From the IMG/VR virus record IMGVR_UViG_3300013104_000001, positions 62,001 through 126,000 of that record: a stretch of 64,000 nt of DNA; one strand, written 5' to 3'. The position numbers and the translations under genes were made by a program. Position 1 is the stretch's first letter. Each line of letters opens with the position of its first letter. The notes beneath the pieces were generated by a model. That model was given only the letters and a program-made list of their open reading frames with translations. It was not told the origin of the DNA and searched no databases. Of this stretch, positions 2,859 to 61,216 are shown piece by piece.

Positions 2859-2891
2859 AAGGGGTAGGGATAACCTACCCCTTTTATGCCG
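2859..2891 (+). terminator. 3'-end hairpin + TTATGCCG tag
   Basis: AAGGGGTAGG-GATAA-CCTACCCCTT then TTATGCCG. Confidence 0.75.
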
Positions 2892-2907
2892 CATAGGGAC
2901 TTATTTC

Positions 2908-3228
2908 ATGTCAGAATTCTTTCACGCATATATATCGTACATCATCAATATTTTCATCTTTATCATGACATTCGCTTGGGTCTATTGCGGTAGTGGTGGC
3001 ACAAGTACTGCCAAAACTAAACTGGTGCGCTATGGTCTACCGACCGTCTTTGGTATTGGGATCTTATTAATGGTAGAGGGGATGGGTGCATTCGATGCTC
3101 ACCTGGAACGCGGTAAGTGTCGTGACCTACCTCCTGGTCAAGGGGTAATGTCAAACGACCGTTGTTACAAACGTATTGACGGGCCGGTGTACATACCTGC
3201 TAACACTGATGTATTTAAAGCGGAGTGA
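2908..3228 (+). CDS. hypothetical membrane protein
   Basis: two hydrophobic segments. Confidence 0.7.
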   Translation: MSEFFHAYISYIINIFIFIMTFAWVYCGSGGTSTAKTKLVRYGLPTVFGIGILLMVEGMGAFDAHLERGKCRDLPPGQGVMSNDRCYKRIDGPVYIPANTDVFKAE

Positions 3229-8033: not shown

Positions 8034-8067
8034 TGCAGAAAATCTCAGACCTACATGACACACGTGA
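8034..8067 (+). promoter_or_regulatory. putative phage-RNAP (early) promoter
   Basis: TGCAGAAAATCTCAGA-CCTACATGAC-acac-GTGA; one of nine copies. Confidence 0.7.
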
Positions 8068-8106
8068 ATTAACCAATCCAATTTAACCCTTGTAAGGAGC
8101 TTTATC

Positions 8107-9498
8107 ATGGCAGCATTAAAATCTAAAACAGCTTTGTTCGACTGGTACATGGGCCTGAAAACAAATCTGAAGTCCAATAAAATTACGGTGATTGAGTTTG
8201 AGAAAGAAATCATCGATACCCTCGGTGCTTTCTTTGAAGGCCATAAAGAAATCACTCCGACTAAAGCCGGGCTCATTGCTGACATTCTGAATGCAGTGGG
8301 TTATGACCATATCTTCACACAACCTGCAGCTGTACAGATCGCTTATGTACTGGGCGAAAGTGGCGCTACTACAGAAGAAGTGGTCAGAACAGCGTTGGAC
8401 AACTTCACTGCGGTTCAGGTAGCTGCACAGCTTGACCGTGAAAAGAAACAAGCTGCGAAAGCTGAAGAGAAAAAGACTTTCGCTAAGTTCCCGTCCAGAG
8501 CTGATATCCAGCAATGGGTCAGCATGAACAAACCGACCTCAGTGACCAATAACGTTCGTGATGCATTTAGCGCAATTAGTACCACGAGAGAATATCAAAA
8601 TACCTGTAAATTCTTCGCTGATGCTGAGAAACAAATTTCAGGACTAATAATGGAGCTGAACCAGACTGATCCTAAATATGTCGATAACCTCTTGCTTATC
8701 GACTATTTCGTCTCTTTGATCAGTGCAGTTGACACTATTCCCGATAGCGAGCGCGAACACCTACAGGACACGCTACGAAGTGTGCACGCCAGTCCTGTCA
8801 AAACACCGCACACCGATGCCTTCATGAAGATCGGTGAACCGACTGTTGGTAATGACCGGGTCACCATTGCTAAGCAAGCATTGGAAGAACGTGTGAATAG
8901 CTCCAGATTCAACGGTAATCCTGATGGCCGTGACCGTAGCAGTCTATTACAACGATTCAGTGAAGGTTACTGTCCGGTAACCACAGCGCGGCATCTGGCA
9001 CGTACAGAGCTGATGGACTTCGTGAAAGATACTACGGCGTCTGTACTGCTGGCTATCGCTAACCCTGTTGAAAAGGCGCATGCGGATTTCTTAATAAAGT
9101 TTACCCGCACCGATACTCTGGAACTAGAAAACGGCGTGCTGGCAATCACTACCGATATCCTGCGTAACGGCTTAGTGGAAATGCGCATCTACCATGAACT
9201 GTTCAGCAACATTGGTGCTAACCAAATGGGCTACGCCAAATACCCTCAGCGAGTTACTGGTTACACGCCTATGGGTGCACTGCTGCAACAGTTCATCTCG
9301 CTGTGGCCGATCCCTAATGTGGCGCCACGTTTCAATCGTACTAACGGTGGTTATAACGGCGGGGATGCTTTCGATGGTCCAGTTTCTCTGGAAGAGTCAT
9401 TGTTGTCTGCACTGCATCAGTCTGCGGCTCAGTATGACGTTACACCAACTTTCGGTGTTGACCTGACTGGTAACTGCTTACTGGTTGTGCTGCACTAA
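8107..9498 (+). CDS. hypothetical protein (shares modules with 9557 and 9882 ORFs)
   Basis: AAGGAG RBS; WY..LK..L and LIDYF.S motifs shared with neighbours. Confidence 0.8.
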   Translation: MAALKSKTALFDWYMGLKTNLKSNKITVIEFEKEIIDTLGAFFEGHKEITPTKAGLIADILNAVGYDHIFTQPAAVQIAYVLGESGATTEEVVRTALDNFTAVQVAAQLDREKKQAAKAEEKKTFAKFPSRADIQQWVSMNKPTSVTNNVRDAFSAISTTREYQNTCKFFADAEKQISGLIMELNQTDPKYVDNLLLIDYFVSLISAVDTIPDSEREHLQDTLRSVHASPVKTPHTDAFMKIGEPTVGNDRVTIAKQALEERVNSSRFNGNPDGRDRSSLLQRFSEGYCPVTTARHLARTELMDFVKDTTASVLLAIANPVEKAHADFLIKFTRTDTLELENGVLAITTDILRNGLVEMRIYHELFSNIGANQMGYAKYPQRVTGYTPMGALLQQFISLWPIPNVAPRFNRTNGGYNGGDAFDGPVSLEESLLSALHQSAAQYDVTPTFGVDLTGNCLLVVLH

Positions 9499-13343: not shown

Positions 13344-13371
13344 GGCCGGTGTCATGCCGGCCTTTATGCCG
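13344..13371 (+). terminator. 3'-end hairpin + TTATGCCG tag
   Basis: GGCCGGT…GCCGGCC then TTATGCCG. Confidence 0.7.
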
Positions 13372-13493
13372 ACTTCTCATCTTTTTGTAATTTCCTACAA
13401 TCTTGGTATTTGTTATACAAAGATTATAAACTTTGTCCCGAGCTAAGGGTAACGTGAAGAGTTATGCTGGCTAAAATTAACTAAGGGTGTTTT

Positions 13494-13982
13494 ATGAATT
13501 TTACTGACCTCTTTACTGGTGCTGTTATCGGTCTATTTGTCTGGTACATGATCTCAGTTACCCGTGCTTACAATCGCAAGGACAAGCTTCTGGCCAATCA
13601 AGGTTCTGAGCAGGTCATCCACTCAATGTTCCGTGTGTTGAACGACCCGACCGGCACTATGCCGTTACAGTTCATCCCTGAGACTATGGAGTCTACGATA
13701 TCCGTGCCGTTGCTGGATGACGTCATTGACGGTATTCGTGGTATTCTCGAGCGTTGGGCGGACGTAAACGACTTCCAGCTATTCAGCACCACTATCTCAC
13801 GTAAAGGTAGTTGGATTAACCACGTTGGGCATCGCAGTCATTTCATTTTGATAGTGACCTATCAATGTGACGATAAACCGGTCGTGGCGCATGAACTTAA
13901 TCTCGATGTCCATAGACTGGGCAGGCATACGGTTCATCAAGACGTTTACCTCGATATACTCAACGGTATGACCACTAAATAA
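13494..13982 (+). CDS. N-terminally anchored membrane protein
   Basis: N-terminal hydrophobic helix plus soluble domain. Confidence 0.7.
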   Translation: MNFTDLFTGAVIGLFVWYMISVTRAYNRKDKLLANQGSEQVIHSMFRVLNDPTGTMPLQFIPETMESTISVPLLDDVIDGIRGILERWADVNDFQLFSTTISRKGSWINHVGHRSHFILIVTYQCDDKPVVAHELNLDVHRLGRHTVHQDVYLDILNGMTTK

Positions 13983-17072: not shown

Positions 17073-17099
17073 GGGTCCCTTCGGGGGCCCTTTATGCCG
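17073..17099 (+). terminator. 3'-end hairpin + TTATGCCG tag
   Basis: GGGTCCC-TTCG-GGGGCCC then TTTATGCCG. Confidence 0.75.
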
Positions 17100-17121
17100 C
17101 CCTAATTTTAATTCATCTATA

Positions 17122-17146
17122 TTTCATGTCTATATTACCAGTATGG
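17122..17146 (+). promoter_or_regulatory. putative phage-RNAP (early) promoter
   Basis: TTTCATG-TCTATATTAC; downstream GTGA box degenerate. Confidence 0.6.
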
Positions 17147-17222
17147 TGAATCAAGGAATATCGAGTCACTACACATGTGCAGTCAATCAATATTCAACAA
17201 TACCTCCAGGAACATACCGACC

Positions 17223-31391: not shown

Positions 31392-31421
31392 GAGGAGGGG
31401 GATCCCCCTCCTCTTATGCCG
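31392..31421 (+). terminator. 3'-end hairpin + TTATGCCG tag
   Basis: GAGGAGGGG…CCCCTCCTC then TTATGCCG. Confidence 0.75.
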
Positions 31422-31493
31422 TGTCTTTTATTCTTTGTTGAAAGATACATAACCGCTCGTTTATATACACCACGTTAAATAAGGAAGAACAAG

Positions 31494-32465
31494 ATGTCTG
31501 ATCAAGTTGAAGGTAAAGTATATCCGTCTCAGTTGTTTGTGACCGTCGCGGGTAATCACCCAATGGCAGAAGCGGCACTGGGCTCAGTTCTGTCCACGTT
31601 CTTCAATGACCGCGGTATCGCTGGTCGTCGTCAGGCAAATGAAGTGTTCGATGCTCAGTTTGCAATTGACACTGTCAATGGCCTGGCGTCCAATCAGGAG
31701 AACACGGTTAACATCATGACCTCTCCACTTACCCTGGCGGCGATGCGTGGCGAATACCAAGTGTGGGACTGGCCGACCTGGGGTGATGAATCACAACCAT
31801 GGACCGCGTTGGTAAATGACGAACTGCGTAACATGTGGACGACATTTACCAGTCAGCAGAAGCGCGCTATCTATAATAGCTTCAATGCGCTGAACATCGA
31901 AGTGGAAGGCGAAGACGAACCGTTGAGTTTTGAACATGCACGGCGCATTATTCTGGATGAATCAGGAACGTTCGTTCGTTTCAACCCTAACAAAGATCGC
32001 ACTGCCTTTGGCGGCATTACGGTAGCTGAATCATTACTTGATACTGCCGAGATCCAAGCGATCCTGTTCTTACTGAACAATACCGTTCCTGGTAAAGATG
32101 AAGGCGATGACGAACCGCGTCTGCGTGAGCAGCCAGTAGTAGAAGATACTGACGCACAGCCAACACCTGAACTGACCGCCGGTGAAAACCCAGCAAGCAA
32201 TGGCGCACATGCCGCACCAGAACTCCCTGATGGCCGTGAAGTATCTGACACCGATGCACCGGTCGCTGATGTAGCCAGCCCTGAGCACAACCCAGAGAAG
32301 ATCGATCTGACCGAAGGCGTACCAGCCGTTAAATCAACCGACCCTGTGCTGGCGCCGGTCTCTGGAAATATCGTATCGAACGACCCGTCTGATGCAGCGA
32401 CACTCGCTTCACCGCCAGCGTCTGGCTCAGTAGTAGAACCATCACGTGACCATTTAGAGGATTAA
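31494..32465 (+). CDS. hypothetical protein with acidic Pro-rich disordered C-terminus
   Basis: AAGGA RBS; low-complexity tail. Confidence 0.75.
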   Translation: MSDQVEGKVYPSQLFVTVAGNHPMAEAALGSVLSTFFNDRGIAGRRQANEVFDAQFAIDTVNGLASNQENTVNIMTSPLTLAAMRGEYQVWDWPTWGDESQPWTALVNDELRNMWTTFTSQQKRAIYNSFNALNIEVEGEDEPLSFEHARRIILDESGTFVRFNPNKDRTAFGGITVAESLLDTAEIQAILFLLNNTVPGKDEGDDEPRLREQPVVEDTDAQPTPELTAGENPASNGAHAAPELPDGREVSDTDAPVADVASPEHNPEKIDLTEGVPAVKSTDPVLAPVSGNIVSNDPSDAATLASPPASGSVVEPSRDHLED

Positions 32466-34649: not shown

Positions 34650-34696
34650 TAGTGAAAGCTATCCCTTCTATGCCCATTATAAATTGAGGATTAGAA

Positions 34697-35077
34697 ATGA
34701 AACAAGTCGCTCCTAACGTCAATGTGTTATCTGTGAACTTACGTTTCTCTGTTAAGCAGATGGAGATCTATGCGAAGTTTATTACTGATGCAGCTACTGC
34801 CGGTAAGAAGATCTTTATCTTTGCTGACAGAGAAGCCCGTGTGAAAGTGAAAGAACTCTTTCCTAAGTTCATGGGTATCGAAGTGTTGGAAAAGATAAAC
34901 GTCAACGCATATCCCACTAATGAACTGACTGCACTTAACGTCGGTCGTGGTGTCTCCAACATGGCAGCTATTTTCATCAGCGAAACCGGTCGGTATAACG
35001 ACCAGATCGCGAAGACTGTCGCGGCTACCAAAGACCACGATGTACTGATCGTCGATTGCAATACGGCAGTAGCGTAA
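34697..35077 (+). CDS. hypothetical protein
   Basis: GAGGA RBS. Confidence 0.7.
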   Translation: MKQVAPNVNVLSVNLRFSVKQMEIYAKFITDAATAGKKIFIFADREARVKVKELFPKFMGIEVLEKINVNAYPTNELTALNVGRGVSNMAAIFISETGRYNDQIAKTVAATKDHDVLIVDCNTAVA

Positions 35078-41090: not shown

Positions 41091-41118
41091 GCCAGGGTTA
41101 GCCCTGGCTCTTATGCCG
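41091..41118 (+). terminator. 3'-end hairpin + TTATGCCG tag
   Basis: GCCAGGG-TTAG-CCCTGGC then TCTTATGCCG. Confidence 0.75.
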
Positions 41119-41128
41119 TGCTAAATCA

Positions 41129-41153
41129 TTTCATACCTACATTACCCATGTGT
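41129..41153 (+). promoter_or_regulatory. putative phage-RNAP (early) promoter
   Basis: TTTCATA-CCTACATTAC-ccat-GTGT. Confidence 0.7.
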
Positions 41154-41206
41154 AGAACCAAACATTGTTAACTTAACCTATAGTGTTTTTGTTGCGAGAT
41201 TAATTA

Positions 41207-41566
41207 ATGAACAGTTTAATTCTGGATGTAACCCCTAACGTGATATCCGTCACGCGCAGATTCACTAATGCAAACTGGGAAGGTATTTTACGTGATATCA
41301 GTTTGCGTGTTCTAAAACAATACGAGGAAGTGCGGGCAACTAACCGTGTTCCTTATTTGGATACTGTTTACTTGCAGGAGCTACAGTGGCGTTATGGTTT
41401 TGAAAGGAATGACCAAGCGGTGCTGACCCAATTTACCGAACTGTATAACAACTTATACTCAGCCATTGCCGGGTATGTCAATTCGATTAACCCCACCAAC
41501 CTGTTGACCGTTGTTCAAGTAACGACAGCCAACAATGTCTTCCAATTGCATTTAGGGTATGCCTAA
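41207..41566 (+). CDS. hypothetical protein
   Basis: first gene after promoter motif; TAATG coupling to hslU. Confidence 0.7.
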   Translation: MNSLILDVTPNVISVTRRFTNANWEGILRDISLRVLKQYEEVRATNRVPYLDTVYLQELQWRYGFERNDQAVLTQFTELYNNLYSAIAGYVNSINPTNLLTVVQVTTANNVFQLHLGYA

Positions 41567-57594: not shown

Positions 57595-57628
57595 TGCAGA
57601 TTTTTTCAGACCTATATGACACAGGTGA
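57595..57628 (+). promoter_or_regulatory. putative phage-RNAP (early) promoter
   Basis: TGCAGATTTTTTCAGA-CCTATATGAC-acag-GTGA. Confidence 0.7.
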
Positions 57629-57684
57629 ATAGATCCACTAGTCTCAGTGGATTAAACTTTAAACTAAACCTGTGGGGTAATAAA

Positions 57685-58122
57685 ATGAAACTGTCTAAAC
57701 TGCGTTATGTACTTTCTAAAGACTTCATCAAGCTTTGTGCTGACAACATCGAAGCGATGGGTATGAAAACCGTCATCCGTATGGCTGAACGTCGCTTCAT
57801 CTTCTCTCATCCAAAAGCTGATGAAATCGAAATCAACGAATCTGATGTGCTGCGTGCACTGAGCATCGCTAAGAACAAAGATGCTCGTTATGACCGTATT
57901 GCTAACCTGTACTCTTGGTTAAGCAACAACCTGAATGGCGTTCGCGCTTCTACTAACCTCAGCCGTGAAGTTGTGAAAAGCCTTTGGGCCAGCTATCGTG
58001 GTTATGTTACTGCGAATGCTCTGGAAGAACTGTGGGTCGTGACCAAAGTCTACGATAGCAACACTGACGTCGAAGCTGAATTCGGTGAAGTTGTCGCTCT
58101 GATCACCAACAGTGAAGTATAA
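57685..58122 (+). CDS. hypothetical protein
   Basis: GGGG RBS, ATG 57685. Confidence 0.7.
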   Translation: MKLSKLRYVLSKDFIKLCADNIEAMGMKTVIRMAERRFIFSHPKADEIEINESDVLRALSIAKNKDARYDRIANLYSWLSNNLNGVRASTNLSREVVKSLWASYRGYVTANALEELWVVTKVYDSNTDVEAEFGEVVALITNSEV

Positions 58123-58132
58123 GGAGCACATT

Positions 58133-58615
58133 ATGTCTAACGGGGTAATGTGGATGATATTAGCAGGCTTTATAGCAATTGGCATGAAACTAGTCGGTAC
58201 AGCAATGTCATCACCGGCCTCGACTGTTGCAGATCTTAAACGCTGGGCTTCTATAAAGACACCAGATTTCATTGATGCGGCTTTCACCGGGGATGCCATG
58301 TTCAGTATCACTGAACGTACGGCTAGACGCCATCTTAACCAATTCGGTTCAAGTGGCATTGTACAAATGTATACAGAAGTATTTGCAGAACTAAAACAAT
58401 GTACGACCATGGATGAGTGGCTGGTATTAGGTAGCATTGAAGATACCAACAATGGAACTGTAAAGATCAACCTGACATTAATCAGAGAAGAAGTAACATT
58501 AGAACGTGAATACATTGTATCCTACTTGCACATCCTGCGAGTCACCGATACGTTCTCACCTGAAATGCTGCGTCGCTCTGTACGTGATGGACTGGTTATT
58601 AATGAAGCTGTATGA
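58133..58615 (+). CDS. N-terminally anchored membrane protein
   Basis: AAGGAG RBS, ATG 58133. Confidence 0.7.
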   Translation: MSNGVMWMILAGFIAIGMKLVGTAMSSPASTVADLKRWASIKTPDFIDAAFTGDAMFSITERTARRHLNQFGSSGIVQMYTEVFAELKQCTTMDEWLVLGSIEDTNNGTVKINLTLIREEVTLEREYIVSYLHILRVTDTFSPEMLRRSVRDGLVINEAV

Positions 58616-58845: not shown

Positions 58846-59016
58846 ATGCTGCGAACTTTCGTACGCTTTATTAAATCAGCTACAGTGTTACCAGTCGATC
58901 AGACTGTAGCAAAACTTCAGCGGGAGGTTAAAGAACAACAAGAACTCATCGAACGTATTCGACGTCGTAATGAGGAACATGTCCGCGGTGAAAGACTGCG
59001 TGACTTTCGCGACTAA
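58846..59016 (+). CDS. 56-aa coiled-coil peptide (not in ORF track)
   Basis: AGGA RBS; MLRTFVRFIKSATVLPVDQTVAKLQREVKEQQELIERIRRRNEEHVRGERLRDFRD. Confidence 0.55.
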   Translation: MLRTFVRFIKSATVLPVDQTVAKLQREVKEQQELIERIRRRNEEHVRGERLRDFRD

Positions 59017-59031
59017 TTAGAAATTATTGAA

Positions 59032-59065
59032 TGCAGAAAATCTCACACCTATATGACCTAGGTGA
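59032..59065 (+). promoter_or_regulatory. putative phage-RNAP (early) promoter
   Basis: TGCAGAAAATCTCACA-CCTATATGAC-ctag-GTGA. Confidence 0.7.
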
Positions 59066-59128
59066 TATGCAGTAGTAAGCACATCAAGATCCAATCCAAT
59101 TTAACTATTCGTCTAGTGAGGTATTATC

Positions 59129-59725
59129 ATGTCAAACGTAAAATCAATCAATGGCAACATTCCAGCAAACCCGGTTATGGCTGAAGCTTTCCAGAAAGCA
59201 GCAGTGAAAGTATTACCGGGTATCGGTGGTGATACCTTGCAAGCCGAATCAATCAACATGACCGCTCGTAGTGAAACATCCACTCAGCATTATGCCAAAG
59301 TGATGGCAGAAATGACCAGCGACAAAGGAAGCAATATCATGCACGAAACTAACGGCGAAGATGCCGGCATGTTCACAGAAGTAAAAGAGATCGCCGAACC
59401 TGTCTTCACTGGCAAACACGGTACTCTCAAACGTCAGGCAATTGCAACCGCCGCATCCCTGGCCGGTACTGTAGCTGCCTATGCTGTCCTGACTGGTGAC
59501 ACCCGTCGTGTAAAAGCGGGTGCTGTTGGTAGCCTGTATGCCAGTGCTGCCATAATGAGCTATGGCGTTGCGAAGCGTGCAATCTTTAAACGCAAAGATC
59601 CGCTGGACAACAAGAAACTGACCTGGAAAGAAACTGCAGCCATCGTTGGTTGTAACCTGGCAGTCAGCGCTGGCCTGTGCAGCCTGAGCATCCTCCTCAA
59701 CAAGAAATTCTCTTCAGCCGAATAA
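59129..59725 (+). CDS. Ala-rich membrane protein, FxxVKxxxEP family
   Basis: MFTEVKEIAEP then three hydrophobic helices. Confidence 0.75.
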   Translation: MSNVKSINGNIPANPVMAEAFQKAAVKVLPGIGGDTLQAESINMTARSETSTQHYAKVMAEMTSDKGSNIMHETNGEDAGMFTEVKEIAEPVFTGKHGTLKRQAIATAASLAGTVAAYAVLTGDTRRVKAGAVGSLYASAAIMSYGVAKRAIFKRKDPLDNKKLTWKETAAIVGCNLAVSAGLCSLSILLNKKFSSAE

Positions 59726-59736
59726 GGTAACGCATC

Positions 59737-60117
59737 ATGGATCAGTTTGAAACTGTAAAAGAAGTACAGGAACCAATGGTCGATCGTGCAGTAGCCACTC
59801 GGGCTATCATGATGGGTTCAGCAATCCGTGCAGCCTCTGTGGCTGCCGGTGTTGCGGTCGGTGCAGCAGCTCTCAAGATCAAACCCAAAGCTGCGATCAA
59901 GGTAGCGCTTCTGCCGGCAGCAATCGAGCTGGCAGTTACCTATGCTTCAATCCGTGCAGCTGATGACGATCAACTGGAAGAGATCGCATTAGAGCGCGAC
60001 AACAAAAAGAACTTCAATGACGCTGCGAAGAACTTCGTGTTCGGCAGTGTCGCTCTCGTGGTGGGCGTATTGATCGCTCGCCAAATCTCAGTGCCGGAGA
60101 AACCGGCTGCAGAATAA
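59737..60117 (+). CDS. Ala-rich membrane protein, FxxVKxxxEP family
   Basis: QFETVKEVQEP then hydrophobic helices. Confidence 0.75.
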   Translation: MDQFETVKEVQEPMVDRAVATRAIMMGSAIRAASVAAGVAVGAAALKIKPKAAIKVALLPAAIELAVTYASIRAADDDQLEEIALERDNKKNFNDAAKNFVFGSVALVVGVLIARQISVPEKPAAE

Positions 60118-60130
60118 AAAGGTAATAGCC

Positions 60131-60319
60131 ATGTTTAACAACAAGAAATGTGTAGAAGAACCAACCTGTGAAGTTGAACTGCGCGTTGGTGTGCAAATCG
60201 TTGGCATGGCTATGGGCTGTGTTCTCGCTCAAAGTGAGAACACCTGGACCAAGGCCTGTGGCGTAGGTTTGACTACTGCGTCATTCCTGTCCCTGATTAA
60301 GAAACTGTCTAAGATCTAA
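60131..60319 (+). CDS. small membrane protein, FxxVKxxxEP family
   Basis: MFNNKKCVEEP then two hydrophobic segments. Confidence 0.65.
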   Translation: MFNNKKCVEEPTCEVELRVGVQIVGMAMGCVLAQSENTWTKACGVGLTTASFLSLIKKLSKI

Positions 60320-60387
60320 GCAATACCTGCATCACAAACAAACCAAACATACTTTAATTAACCTAACTGTAAATAAGCGAGATTACC

Positions 60388-60678
60388 ATGAAAACCGAAA
60401 CTATCACTTCAATCAACGAAACTGCTAAAACTGCTGGCGCAACTGTTGAGAACGCGGTAAAGAACGAAATGTTCGACGCTGTTAAAACTGTGGCTGAGCC
60501 AACCGTTGCAAAGAAAATCGTTAAACGCACTCTGATCGGTGCTGGCGTTCTGGCGCTGGTAGCCGGTGGCTTCTACGGCTACAAAGCCCTGAAGAAAACC
60601 AAATCGATCACTGTCGTCACTGACGAAACATCAAACGACCCAGCAGTCGATGTCGTGGTTGAAGAAACCGCAGCATAA
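60388..60678 (+). CDS. single-pass membrane protein, FxxVKxxxEP family
   Basis: MFDAVKTVAEP then TM LIGAGVLALVAGGFYG. Confidence 0.75.
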   Translation: MKTETITSINETAKTAGATVENAVKNEMFDAVKTVAEPTVAKKIVKRTLIGAGVLALVAGGFYGYKALKKTKSITVVTDETSNDPAVDVVVEETAA

Positions 60679-60686
60679 TTTTGTGA

Positions 60687-60731
60687 GGGCTAGGGAATCC
60701 TAGCCCCACTCTTTCCTCTTTCTTTTTTTTT
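60687..60731 (+). terminator. intrinsic terminator
   Basis: GGGCTAGG-GAAT-CCTAGCCC followed by pyrimidine/T tract. Confidence 0.7.
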
Positions 60732-60745
60732 GTTTCGAGGTGCGT

Positions 60746-61216
60746 ATGCACGTTATTACTACCGGTGCAATTTCTATCCTGCTGTTCATCACGTTTCTGG
60801 CTTTATCAGAATGGCGGTTACGTGCCAGCAAAAACTTAATCTTTCGCGAGATCACCAAGATTGCTTATTCAGTGTTACGCTACACGGAAATAAAAGAAGT
60901 CACACCAGAGATCTATCTCATCTGTGCTGAGCTACAATCACGCATGATCAAGATGGGTAACTTTGCAGTGACACCCCGTGATAAAGAAATTGCCATGACC
61001 ATTGCTAAGTACATTGCTGTGTTTGGTAATCAGCGTGTACGTGATCCCGTTGTGTTGTTAACGGTTATCGCCAGACGCTTAAATGAGTTTGATGGTATAT
61101 CAGCTAAGTCACTTACAACCACCAATGGACGCATGGAACTCGTTATAGGACACGACGATGCAACTGACTATGATCGTATCATCTTTCGCTTCAACTCTAC
61201 GCAGACTTTATTCTAG
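60746..61216 (+). CDS. N-terminally anchored membrane protein
   Basis: GAGGTG RBS; N-terminal TM. Confidence 0.7.
   Translation: MHVITTGAISILLFITFLALSEWRLRASKNLIFREITKIAYSVLRYTEIKEVTPEIYLICAELQSRMIKMGNFAVTPRDKEIAMTIAKYIAVFGNQRVRDPVVLLTVIARRLNEFDGISAKSLTTTNGRMELVIGHDDATDYDRIIFRFNSTQTLF

What the first reader, a model, noticed from the sequence alone, without database searches (positions are those of the whole stretch)
59032..60731. Early four-gene membrane-protein operon sharing a short F-x-x-V-K-x-[IV]-x-E-P motif
Seen: four consecutive, otherwise dissimilar Ala/Gly-rich membrane proteins each carry the motif shortly before the first hydrophobic segment: MFTEVKEIAEP (59369), QFETVKEVQEP (59737 ORF), MFNNKKCVEEP (60131) and MFDAVKTVAEP (60388 ORF). 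The unit is bounded by a TGCAGA-class promoter and a terminator. Conservation is at the protein level with differing codons. Established: nucleus-forming phages begin infection in a membrane-bound early vesicle. Inference: a linear sorting, docking or cleavage signal that directs a set of early proteins to one membrane complex or compartment; possibly an undescribed targeting system.
Basis: partly seen in the sequence, partly recalled or inferred. Interest (0 to 1): 0.7.

Follow-up and report, generated by a model that had tools for sequence, protein, structure and literature searches.

The report
Four paralogous phage membrane proteins
Four neighbouring genes of a nucleus-forming jumbo phage encode related small membrane proteins; the short motif they share just before the first membrane helix is real and changes in step in all copies between phage lineages, so it looks like a common contact surface of one protein set rather than a general sorting signal.

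Summary
Four consecutive ORFs (59129-60678, + strand) each carry F-x7-E-P 8-13 residues before the first hydrophobic helix. The fuller pattern occurs three times in the whole 287-kb genome, all in this cassette. F, E and P are invariant in 28 of 28 orthologues from seven phages, with synonymous codon changes.

The proteins are not unrelated. Profile comparisons show distant paralogues sharing a module: acidic helix, Pro, basic linker, Ala/Gly-rich TM1. The motif occurs in no other protein of the genome, so it is not a proteome-wide address tag.

The new result is that the cassette exists only in three related chimallivirus lineages, each with its own version of the motif, shared by all its paralogues: F..VK.V.EP, [ES]QI[ED].V and EV[NDE]AP[EK][TS]. 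The membrane bodies group by orthologue. One 5' gene-conversion tract is visible in Proteus phage 10.

Best reading: one operon, driven by an early-type promoter, encodes a membrane protein set. The juxtamembrane helix is a shared interface, either between the subunits or with one phage partner. Function, topology and timing remain inferred. There is no evidence for cleavage, sorting or a link to the early vesicle.

The parts
59028..59079 (+). Promoter-like element: TGCAGA, about 11 nt, ACCTATATGAC, 3 nt, GGTGATA, then AGTAGTAA. It is a variant of the genome's main conserved promoter family.
   Evidence: Nearly invariant in 7 phages although the coding DNA is about 73% identical. There are four copies of this subtype in the genome. 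About 24 intergenic copies of the wider family CTA[CT]AT[TG]A[CT] exist, one of them 80 nt upstream of chimallin. The same subtype lies upstream of the cassette genes of Proteus phage 10.
59080..59128 (+). Conserved 5' leader with a Shine-Dalgarno sequence (GAGG) before O1.
   Evidence: Alignment A6.
59129..59725 (+). O1, 198 aa: conserved soluble N-terminal part (1-80), motif (81-91), basic linker, three hydrophobic helices. Matches phrog_11650.
   Evidence: An exhaustive HMMER search finds only two clusters, its own and RAY-like.
59369..59401 (+). Motif copy 1, MFTEVKEIAEP.
59737..60117 (+). O2, 126 aa: motif at residues 3-13, three hydrophobic helices. Matches phrog_11484.
59743..59775 (+). 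Motif copy 2, QFETVKEVQEP.
60131..60319 (+). O3, 62 aa: motif at residues 1-11, two hydrophobic helices, basic C-terminus. Matches phrog_10939. Its membrane-spanning part is the best conserved of the four.
60131..60163 (+). Motif copy 3, MFNNKKCVEEP (weakest copy).
60388..60678 (+). O4, 96 aa: motif at residues 28-38, basic linker, one hydrophobic helix, basic cluster, acidic tail. Matches phrog_11081.
60469..60501 (+). Motif copy 4, MFDAVKTVAEP.
60683..60731 (+). Terminator-like hairpin (60683-60709) followed by a pyrimidine and T tract.
   Evidence: Free energy -21.9 kcal/mol, z -3.5. The stem is invariant in 7 phages. The simple consensus scan missed it because the T run is not adjacent to the stem.
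60746..61216 (+). Downstream neighbour O5, 156 aa, with an N-terminal hydrophobic helix and no motif. It is conserved with the cassette in clades A and B and absent in Proteus phage 10. It is probably not part of the family.
57595..58615 (+). Sibling unit upstream: a second copy of the same promoter subtype, then two ORFs (57616-58122 and 58112-58615, the latter with an N-terminal hydrophobic helix). No motif.

Best explanation
The four genes are one operon (conserved promoter, tightly spaced ORFs, hairpin terminator). They encode a lineage-restricted family of paralogous small inner-membrane proteins of a chimallivirus.

The motif is the conserved core of a module inherited from the common ancestor of the paralogues. 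The module is a short acidic amphipathic helix with a hydrophobic face (F, V, V/I at i, i+3, i+6), closed by E-P, then a basic linker, then an Ala/Gly-rich first transmembrane helix. The helix most likely lies on the cytoplasmic side, next to the membrane.

All paralogues of one genome keep the same version of this helix while versions differ between lineages. I therefore infer that the helix is a shared interface. Either the four proteins assemble with one another through it, or they all dock the same phage-encoded partner.

Sameness is kept partly by gene conversion between the 5' ends (seen in Proteus phage 10) and, in the window's lineage, by selection on the protein.

Shown: the operon anatomy, the motif statistics, the paralogy, the restricted distribution, and the lineage-specific motif versions.
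Inferred: membrane insertion, topology, early timing, and the interface role.
For: - Paralogy: hhalign O2 vs O4 P 1.7e-5 over motif, linker and TM1; O1 vs O4 7e-4; O1 vs O2 0.011 over 108 columns; O3 vs O2 0.016. Family HMMs also hit each other.
- Exclusivity: the motif or module profile hits only cassette genes in this genome, in Proteus phage 10 and in clade-B contigs.
- Three versions: clade A F..VK.V.EP; clade B EQIETV, SQIDEV, EQIEVV, EQIDAV; Proteus phage 10 EV[NDE]AP[EK][TS] in five proteins.
- Orthology of the membrane-spanning parts across clades: O3 A-B E 3e-13, A-C 7e-6; O2 A-B 5e-5; O4 A-C 1.4e-4. O3 membrane-spanning part 22/51 identical between A and B, against 4/11 in the N-terminus.
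- Motif-window identity is 0.50 between paralogues of one genome and 0.20 between orthologues of different clades; 0 of 20,000 label permutations reach this difference.
- Inside clade A, position F+4 is K in 19 of 20 motifs of the window's sub-lineage and in 0 of 8 in RAY/AH06.
- Gene conversion: 52 of 54 nt are identical at the 5' ends of two Proteus phage 10 genes, then identity collapses.
- Selection: codons at F, E and P differ.
- Charge pattern: motif net -2, -3, 0, -1; linker +3, +1, -1, +4.
- Promoter and terminator conservation.
Against: - No direct evidence of any interaction: the complex prediction gave no answer and the single-chain model is of low confidence.
- The motif window is not the most conserved part of any of the four families (ranks 43/210, 28/118, 43/53, 60/90). 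Only three anchor residues are fixed.
- Gene conversion alone could produce within-genome sameness without any functional need.
- The cross-clade register of the motif window was chosen by eye, and MAFFT prefers another register for O3.
- Orthology of O1 between clades A and B, and of the fourth clade-B gene with O4, is weak. In one clade-B subtype the fourth gene lacks the motif.
- The loop charges of O2 suggest the opposite orientation to O1, which would put its motif on the other side of the membrane.
Confidence: 0.45

Rival explanations
1. Relic plus homogenisation. The motif is the slowly decaying N-terminus of a tandemly duplicated ancestor. Occasional gene conversion between the 5' ends keeps the copies alike. 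The helix has only a generic structural role, such as capping TM1 or fixing topology, and no specific partner.
For: The paralogy is established. A clear conversion tract exists in Proteus phage 10, and three of its five genes share 21 identical nucleotides over the motif. The motif window is only averagely conserved within each family. In several members the motif sits at the very N-terminus, as expected for an ancestral start.
Against: In the window's lineage the paralogues use different codons at the conserved residues, so there has been no recent conversion. Even so, F, E and P are invariant in 28 of 28 proteins across phages whose proteins are only 44-53% identical. A generic cap would not need the same residues in all four proteins, nor the joint K switch at F+4.
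Confidence: 0.25
2. The motif is a linear sorting, docking or cleavage signal, read by a dedicated machinery, that sends early proteins to one compartment such as the early injection vesicle.
For: Fixed position before TM1, protein-level selection, an early-type promoter, and lineage-specific versions that could track a co-evolving receptor. A weak language-model look-alike of O4 is a viral cluster with an LPXTG-type anchor (score 0.83); this is a lead only.
Against: Only the four paralogues carry the motif. No passenger domain lies upstream in O2 and O3. Pfam and NCBIfam give no sorting-signal or sortase-type hit. The cassette was not found beside the DUF7194 gene in the more distant chimalliviruses examined, some of phiKZ-like genome size; early vesicles have been described for the family (preprint 10.1101/2023.09.20.558163, abstract seen). 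Cleavage before Pro is unusual (own knowledge).
Confidence: 0.12
3. A holin- or pinholin-like membrane-permeabilising set, or some other host-membrane effector such as superinfection exclusion. The weakly hydrophobic Ala/Gly-rich helices would act like releasable anchors, and the N-terminal motif would regulate timing.
For: Sizes and helix counts (3, 3, 2 and 1 helices; 62-198 aa), Ala/Gly-rich moderately hydrophobic first helices and charged C-termini. A faint structural look-alike of O1 is a holin cluster (TM-score 0.33), which is not evidence by itself.
Against: The only endolysin-like gene found (PG_binding_1, 238 aa) lies 32 kb away with no membrane-protein neighbours. The promoter is of the chimallin type rather than a late type. 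There are no holin family hits.
Confidence: 0.1
4. The motif is a site for the prohead protease. The phiKZ-type consensus is S/A/G-x-E (own knowledge, not checked in a paper here).
For: The Proteus phage 10 version A-P-E fits this consensus in four of five proteins.
Against: In clade A the residue three before the cut would be I, V, M or Q in most copies, and the next residue is Pro. Clade B has no consistent E. Membrane proteins are unlikely head contents. The cassette proteins are not among the proteins listed as detected by mass spectrometry of RAY and Deimos-Minion lysates (PMC6690015).
Confidence: 0.02

Closest known systems
PHROG families 11650, 11484, 10939, 11081 (unknown function; RAY gp139-gp142, AH06 gp145-gp148)
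   Same: Direct orthologues, full-length matches with E 2e-26 to 2e-31, in the same gene order and context.
   Different: No difference in kind. These families carry no annotation, and the shared motif and paralogy between them are not recorded in the library.
Type IV pilin / pseudopilin gene sets
   Same: Several consecutive genes encode otherwise divergent proteins that share only a short N-terminal motif with Phe and Glu plus a hydrophobic helix, and that assemble through this shared N-terminal segment. This is the best analogy for how such a set can work.
   Different: There is no Gly-Phe cleavage site with Glu at +5 inside the hydrophobic helix. Here 7-12 residues, basic in O1, O2 and O4, separate the motif from the helix. 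Three members have two or three helices. No pilin family hit was found. This is a resemblance from memory, not a membership.
Tripartite sorting signals (LPXTG, PEP-CTERM)
   Same: A Pro-containing motif, a hydrophobic helix, then a basic cluster (O4: ..AEP.., helix, KALKKTK).
   Different: Those signals are C-terminal, abut the helix, follow a secreted passenger domain and need a sortase or exosortase. Here the motif is N-terminal, has no passenger, and gives no family hit.
Holins and pinholins (lambda S, phage 21 S)
   Same: Small phage membrane proteins with one to three helices, a weakly hydrophobic first helix, and N-terminal residues that matter for regulation.
   Different: No homology, no neighbouring endolysin, and an early-type promoter.
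Early small membrane proteins of T4 (Imm, Sp)
   Same: Small inner-membrane proteins made early by a large virulent phage (own knowledge).
   Different: No sequence relation. Imm and Sp are not a paralogous set and share no motif.

Membership tests
PHROG 11650 / 11484 / 10939 / 11081 | Full-length profile match. | tested here: met
   E 2.4e-31, 1.5e-30, 7.5e-27 and 2.2e-26, covering nearly the whole profiles.
One paralogous family (O1-O4) | Profile-profile similarity beyond the 10-residue motif. | tested here: met
   O2 vs O4 P 1.7e-5 over 42 columns. Cross-hits of the family HMMs at E 3e-4 to 3e-3. O3 is the weakest (0.016; not recovered in the leave-one-out test).
Type IV pilin-like proteins | Class III signal: Gly at -1, Phe at +1, Glu at +5, followed at once by about 20 hydrophobic residues. 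| tested here: not met
   The sequences show charged residues for about 20 positions after the Phe. No Pfam or NCBIfam hit.
LPXTG / PEP-CTERM type sorting signals | C-terminal motif-helix-basic tail after a secreted domain, recognised by curated models. | tested here: not met
   The motif is N-terminal and there is no signal peptide or passenger. No hits up to E 1.
Holins | Holin family match, or a position beside the endolysin in a late lysis cassette. | tested here: not met
   No holin hit. The endolysin-like gene is 32 kb away. Pore formation itself cannot be tested with these tools.
Substrates of the phiKZ-type prohead protease | S/A/G-x-E cleavage motif conserved in orthologues. | tested here: not met
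   The residue three before the cut is I, V, M, Q or A in clade A, and clade B has no consistent E.
Early (virion RNA polymerase) transcription units of phiKZ-like phages | The highly conserved AT-rich motif that can be found by sequence alone upstream of early operons (PMC7598289). | tested here: inconclusive
   The element belongs to a family of about 24 copies that also precedes chimallin. However, the cassette subtype has G in place of T, which creates TATG, the core of phiKZ late promoters. No transcript data exist.
Integral membrane proteins | Helices hydrophobic enough to span the bilayer; experimentally membrane-bound. | tested here: inconclusive
   Kyte-Doolittle 19-residue means are 1.3-2.0. 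AlphaFold predicts long helices at low confidence. No topology predictor or experiment was available.

The most novel reading that the evidence does not exclude
The helix is a genome-specific address tag. A phage-encoded receptor, not yet identified, recognises the same short juxtamembrane peptide on every member of a small set of early membrane proteins and gathers them into one membrane site. Tag and receptor co-evolve, giving each phage lineage its own version. The three versions found here, and the joint K switch inside clade A, would be the footprint of that co-evolution.
Probability: 0.12. Interest if true: 0.75.

Novelty: new member of a known kind. Interest (0 to 1): 0.4.

Why it matters
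Membrane proteins of nucleus-forming jumbo phages are almost unstudied. The reviews and papers searched here mention no phage-encoded membrane proteins of this kind.

This cassette is a compact, conserved and probably early-expressed set, in a phage group that includes a cultivable model (Erwinia phage RAY). It offers a built-in experimental handle: a 10-residue element with three natural versions that can be swapped.

If the element proves to be an interface, it would give a first entry point into what these phages do at the host inner membrane. If it proves to be only a relic kept alike by gene conversion, it is still a clean small example of concerted evolution in a phage gene family.

Its reach is limited. 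The cassette is confined to one sub-lineage of chimalliviruses, so it cannot explain family-wide biology.

Tried and rejected
- Complex prediction of O1(70-198)+O2+O3+O4: no answer (score 0.00, own folds uncertain). It counts neither for nor against binding.
- AlphaFold2 of O1 with a 6-row alignment: mean pLDDT 48.7. Only the helix boundaries were used, and no fold search was run.
- ESM Atlas look-alikes for O1, O2 and O4: best scores 0.76-0.83 and TM-scores mostly under 0.6, all within the noise range the tool states.
- Pfam and NCBIfam: nothing near any cut-off.
- Exhaustive HMMER search of the O1 family profile against 1.84 billion representatives: only two clusters, so no distant relatives.
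- Word-indexed search with O4 and with the 108-aa protein of Proteus phage 10: close relatives only.
- tblastn against phage records: limited by low-complexity filtering.
- Sequencing runs: the source is a rhizosphere metagenome and no infection RNA-seq exists.
- Lysis idea: looked for lysozyme, SLT and PG-binding domains. One endolysin-like gene was found, far away.
- Virion or lysate proteomics of RAY and Deimos-Minion: the 'gp140' listed there is a Deimos-Minion number and by offset is not a cassette gene.
- TGCAGA as a stand-alone promoter hexamer: not enriched.
- Sigma-70 type scan: at background level.
- Strand bias of the promoter family (24 of 25 on +) is weak evidence, because 81% of genes are on +.
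- Metagenome scan with the O3 alignment: only re-found clades A and B.
- Whole-record search of the metagenome contigs was not possible.
- Syntenic regions of phiKp_32, pEa_SNUABM_54 and Joad, and 25 IMG/VR loci: no cassette.
Full report
**What the window is.** The window is bases 62,001-126,000 of a 287,406-bp virus record with terminal repeats, assembled from a rhizosphere metagenome. It encodes a nuclear shell protein (phrog_4795, E 1.8e-207). The region is about 73% identical in DNA to Erwinia phages of the genus Agricanvirus, such as RAY and Ea35-70. It is therefore a chimallivirus, a nucleus-forming jumbo phage.

**The observation.** Four ORFs lie head to tail on the + strand: O1 59129-59725 (198 aa), O2 59737-60117 (126 aa), O3 60131-60319 (62 aa) and O4 60388-60678 (96 aa), with gaps of 11, 13 and 68 nt. 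Each has the quoted motif 8-13 residues before its first hydrophobic helix.
- F..[VILM]..[VILM].EP occurs three times in all six-frame ORFs of the whole genome, each time in this cassette.
- A motif HMM scores the four ORFs at 42-46 bits and everything else at 6.5 bits or less.
- When one family is left out of the model, O1, O2 and O4 are each the best non-training hit among 4,751 ORFs. O3 is not recovered.
- In seven phages (the window, RAY, AH06 and four metagenomic relatives) F, E and P are invariant in all four families, 28 of 28, while the residues between them vary.
- Within each family, however, the motif window is only averagely conserved.

**The proteins are paralogues.** Profile-profile comparison aligns O2 with O4 over motif, linker and first helix (P 1.7e-5). 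It aligns O1 with O4 (7e-4), O1 residues 82-198 with the whole of O2 (0.011), and O3 with O2 weakly (0.016). Family HMMs cross-hit one another.
- The shared module is an acidic amphipathic stretch (net charge -2, -3, 0, -1), Pro, a linker that is basic in three of the four (+3, +1, -1, +4), and an Ala/Gly-rich helix.
- In O2 and O3, and in several relatives, the motif sits at the very N-terminus. O1 and O4 look like the same module with N-terminal extensions.
- 'Otherwise dissimilar' is thus too strong: the motif is inherited.

**Known families.** There are no Pfam or NCBIfam matches. The four PHROG families that match carry no function. An exhaustive profile search with O1 against 1.84 billion representatives finds only its own and the RAY-like cluster.

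**Operon signals.** Upstream of O1 lies a roughly 45-bp element (TGCAGA, about 11 nt, ACCTATATGAC, 3 nt, GGTGATA) that is almost invariant in the seven phages.
- The bare hexamer is not enriched upstream of genes.
- The element is a subtype of the genome's main conserved promoter-like family. That family often reads hairpin, TTATGCCG, about 14 nt, CCTA[CT]ATTAC, GTGATA, with about 24 intergenic copies. One copy lies 80 nt upstream of the chimallin gene.
- A review of these phages states that the only promoter motif visible by sequence alone is the early one, used by the virion RNA polymerase (PMC7598289). Chimallin is an early product (own knowledge). 'Early' is therefore plausible.
- It is not shown, however. 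The cassette subtype (four copies, three of them before small membrane-protein genes) has a G that creates TATG, the core of phiKZ late promoters. No transcript data exist.
- After O4 comes a stable hairpin (-21.9 kcal/mol, z -3.5) with a T-rich tail, and its stem is invariant in seven phages.

**Distribution.** I used the conserved structural neighbours (DUF7194 and a virion protein) as anchors and fetched syntenic regions from phage records and IMG/VR.
- The cassette occurs in three lineages only.
  - Clade A is the window's group plus Agricanvirus.
  - Clade B is a set of about 280-kb metagenomic phages (loci L025-L027, L055, L056).
  - Clade C is Proteus phage 10.
- None of 25 more distant chimallivirus loci, nor phiKp_32, pEa_SNUABM_54 or Joad, has the cassette at this place.
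- One distant locus has a single O4-like gene.

**The main new result.** Each lineage has its own version of the pre-helix motif, shared by all of its paralogues.
- Clade A has F..VK.V.EP.
- Clade B has EQIETV, SQIDEV, EQIEVV and EQIDAV.
- Proteus phage 10 has EV[NDE]AP[EK][TS] in five proteins.
- A core of V-x-x-P is common to most copies.
- The membrane-spanning parts of the proteins group by orthologue instead: O3 A-B E 3e-13 and A-C 7e-6, O2 A-B 5e-5, O4 A-C 1.4e-4. For O3, 22 of 51 residues after the Pro are identical between clades A and B, against 4 of 11 before it.
- In a 13-residue window anchored on the hydrophobic residue three before the Pro, paralogues of one genome are 50% identical and orthologues of different clades 20% identical. 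None of 20,000 label permutations reaches this difference. The register was chosen by eye, which is a weakness.
- Inside clade A the same pattern recurs: position F+4 is Lys in 19 of 20 motifs of the window's sub-lineage and in none of 8 in RAY and AH06.
- The module profile hits nothing outside the cassette in Proteus phage 10 or in two partial clade-B genomes.

**How the sameness is kept.** In Proteus phage 10 two genes share 52 of 54 nucleotides at their 5' ends, after which identity collapses. A third gene shares 21 identical nucleotides over the motif. Gene conversion between the 5' ends therefore happens. In the window's lineage the paralogues use different codons at the conserved residues, yet F, E and P have stayed fixed across phages whose proteins are only 44-53% identical. 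Selection on the protein is therefore also at work.

**Interpretation.** I read the cassette as one operon for a set of small inner-membrane proteins whose juxtamembrane helix is a shared interface, either between the subunits or with one phage-encoded partner. The best analogy is a pilin or pseudopilin gene set, where divergent proteins share only an N-terminal segment through which they assemble. The defining pilin features are not met, so this is an analogy and not membership. Confidence is moderate (0.45), because no interaction has been shown.
- The main rival (0.25) is a relic kept alike by conversion, with only a generic structural role.
- A holin-like or other membrane-effector role (0.10) fits sizes and helix types. 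It does not fit the promoter type or the distance to the only endolysin-like gene.
- A prohead-protease site (0.02) does not fit the residues.

**Uncertainties.**
- Membrane insertion and topology are predictions. The helices are only moderately hydrophobic.
- The loop charges of O2 (+3, then -3) suggest the opposite orientation to O1 (+2, then +3).
- The structure and complex predictions were uninformative.

**Verdict.** It remains a lineage-restricted paralogous family of unknown function, not a demonstrated targeting system.

Noticed in passing
window 8051, 17130, 20835, 34633, 41137, 44882, 54426, 57612, 59049; also genome 205807 (outside the window, upstream of chimallin): A composite promoter-like family of about 24 intergenic copies, 24 of 25 on the + strand. 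Its core is CTA[CT]AT[TG]A[CT], followed 3-4 nt later by GTGATA-like bases and often preceded by TGC[AC]G-type bases. It probably marks the phage's early promoters.
   Followed up: partly
window 2871-2908, 8040-8107, 13365-13494, 17093-17175, 31415-31494, 34669-34697, 41112-41207 and others: At least 18 copies of a GC-rich hairpin immediately followed by T(T/C)TATGCCG. This is often the upstream half of the promoter family above, and looks like a terminator-promoter junction module between transcription units.
   Followed up: partly
window 59094-59112 and 60350-60372; genome 179038; L019 upstream of the cassette genes: A recurring leader motif (CAATCCAATTTAAC(C)TA...) between promoter and Shine-Dalgarno sequence of several genes, also present in Proteus phage 10. 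Its role (RNA processing or translation) is unknown.
   Followed up: no
genome 216493-217821 (window coordinates would be 154493-155821, outside the window; locus L017): A further copy of the TGCAGA...ACCTATATGAC promoter subtype drives another run of small proteins with N-terminal hydrophobic helices (80, 45 and 150 aa). These lack the motif.
   Followed up: partly
L019 8012-8626 (Proteus phage 10, minus strand): The 130-aa and 69-aa genes share their first 18 codons (52 of 54 nt identical) and then diverge abruptly. This is a recent gene-conversion or recombination tract covering exactly the motif region.
   Followed up: yes
window 59129-60117 (O1 and O2): O1 and O2 align along their three-helix parts but have opposite charge in the second loop (+3 in O1, -3 in O2). 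This hints at opposite membrane orientation of two paralogues, as in dual-topology pairs. It remains unexplained.
   Followed up: no
L005 3162-3428: One close relative has an extra 88-aa, very basic ORF inserted between O3 and O4. It has no hydrophobic helix and no motif.
   Followed up: partly
window 59165-59260 (O1 residues 12-44): The soluble N-terminal part of O1 holds the most conserved stretch of the whole cassette (NP.MAEAF..AA.K..P..GGDTLQAE..NM, invariant in seven phages). It has no detectable relatives anywhere and is likely a specific binding surface.
   Followed up: partly
window 58846-59016: A 56-aa, highly charged coiled-coil-like ORF just upstream of the cassette promoter. It is conserved in RAY (gp138) and AH06 (gp144) and has no family match.
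   Followed up: no
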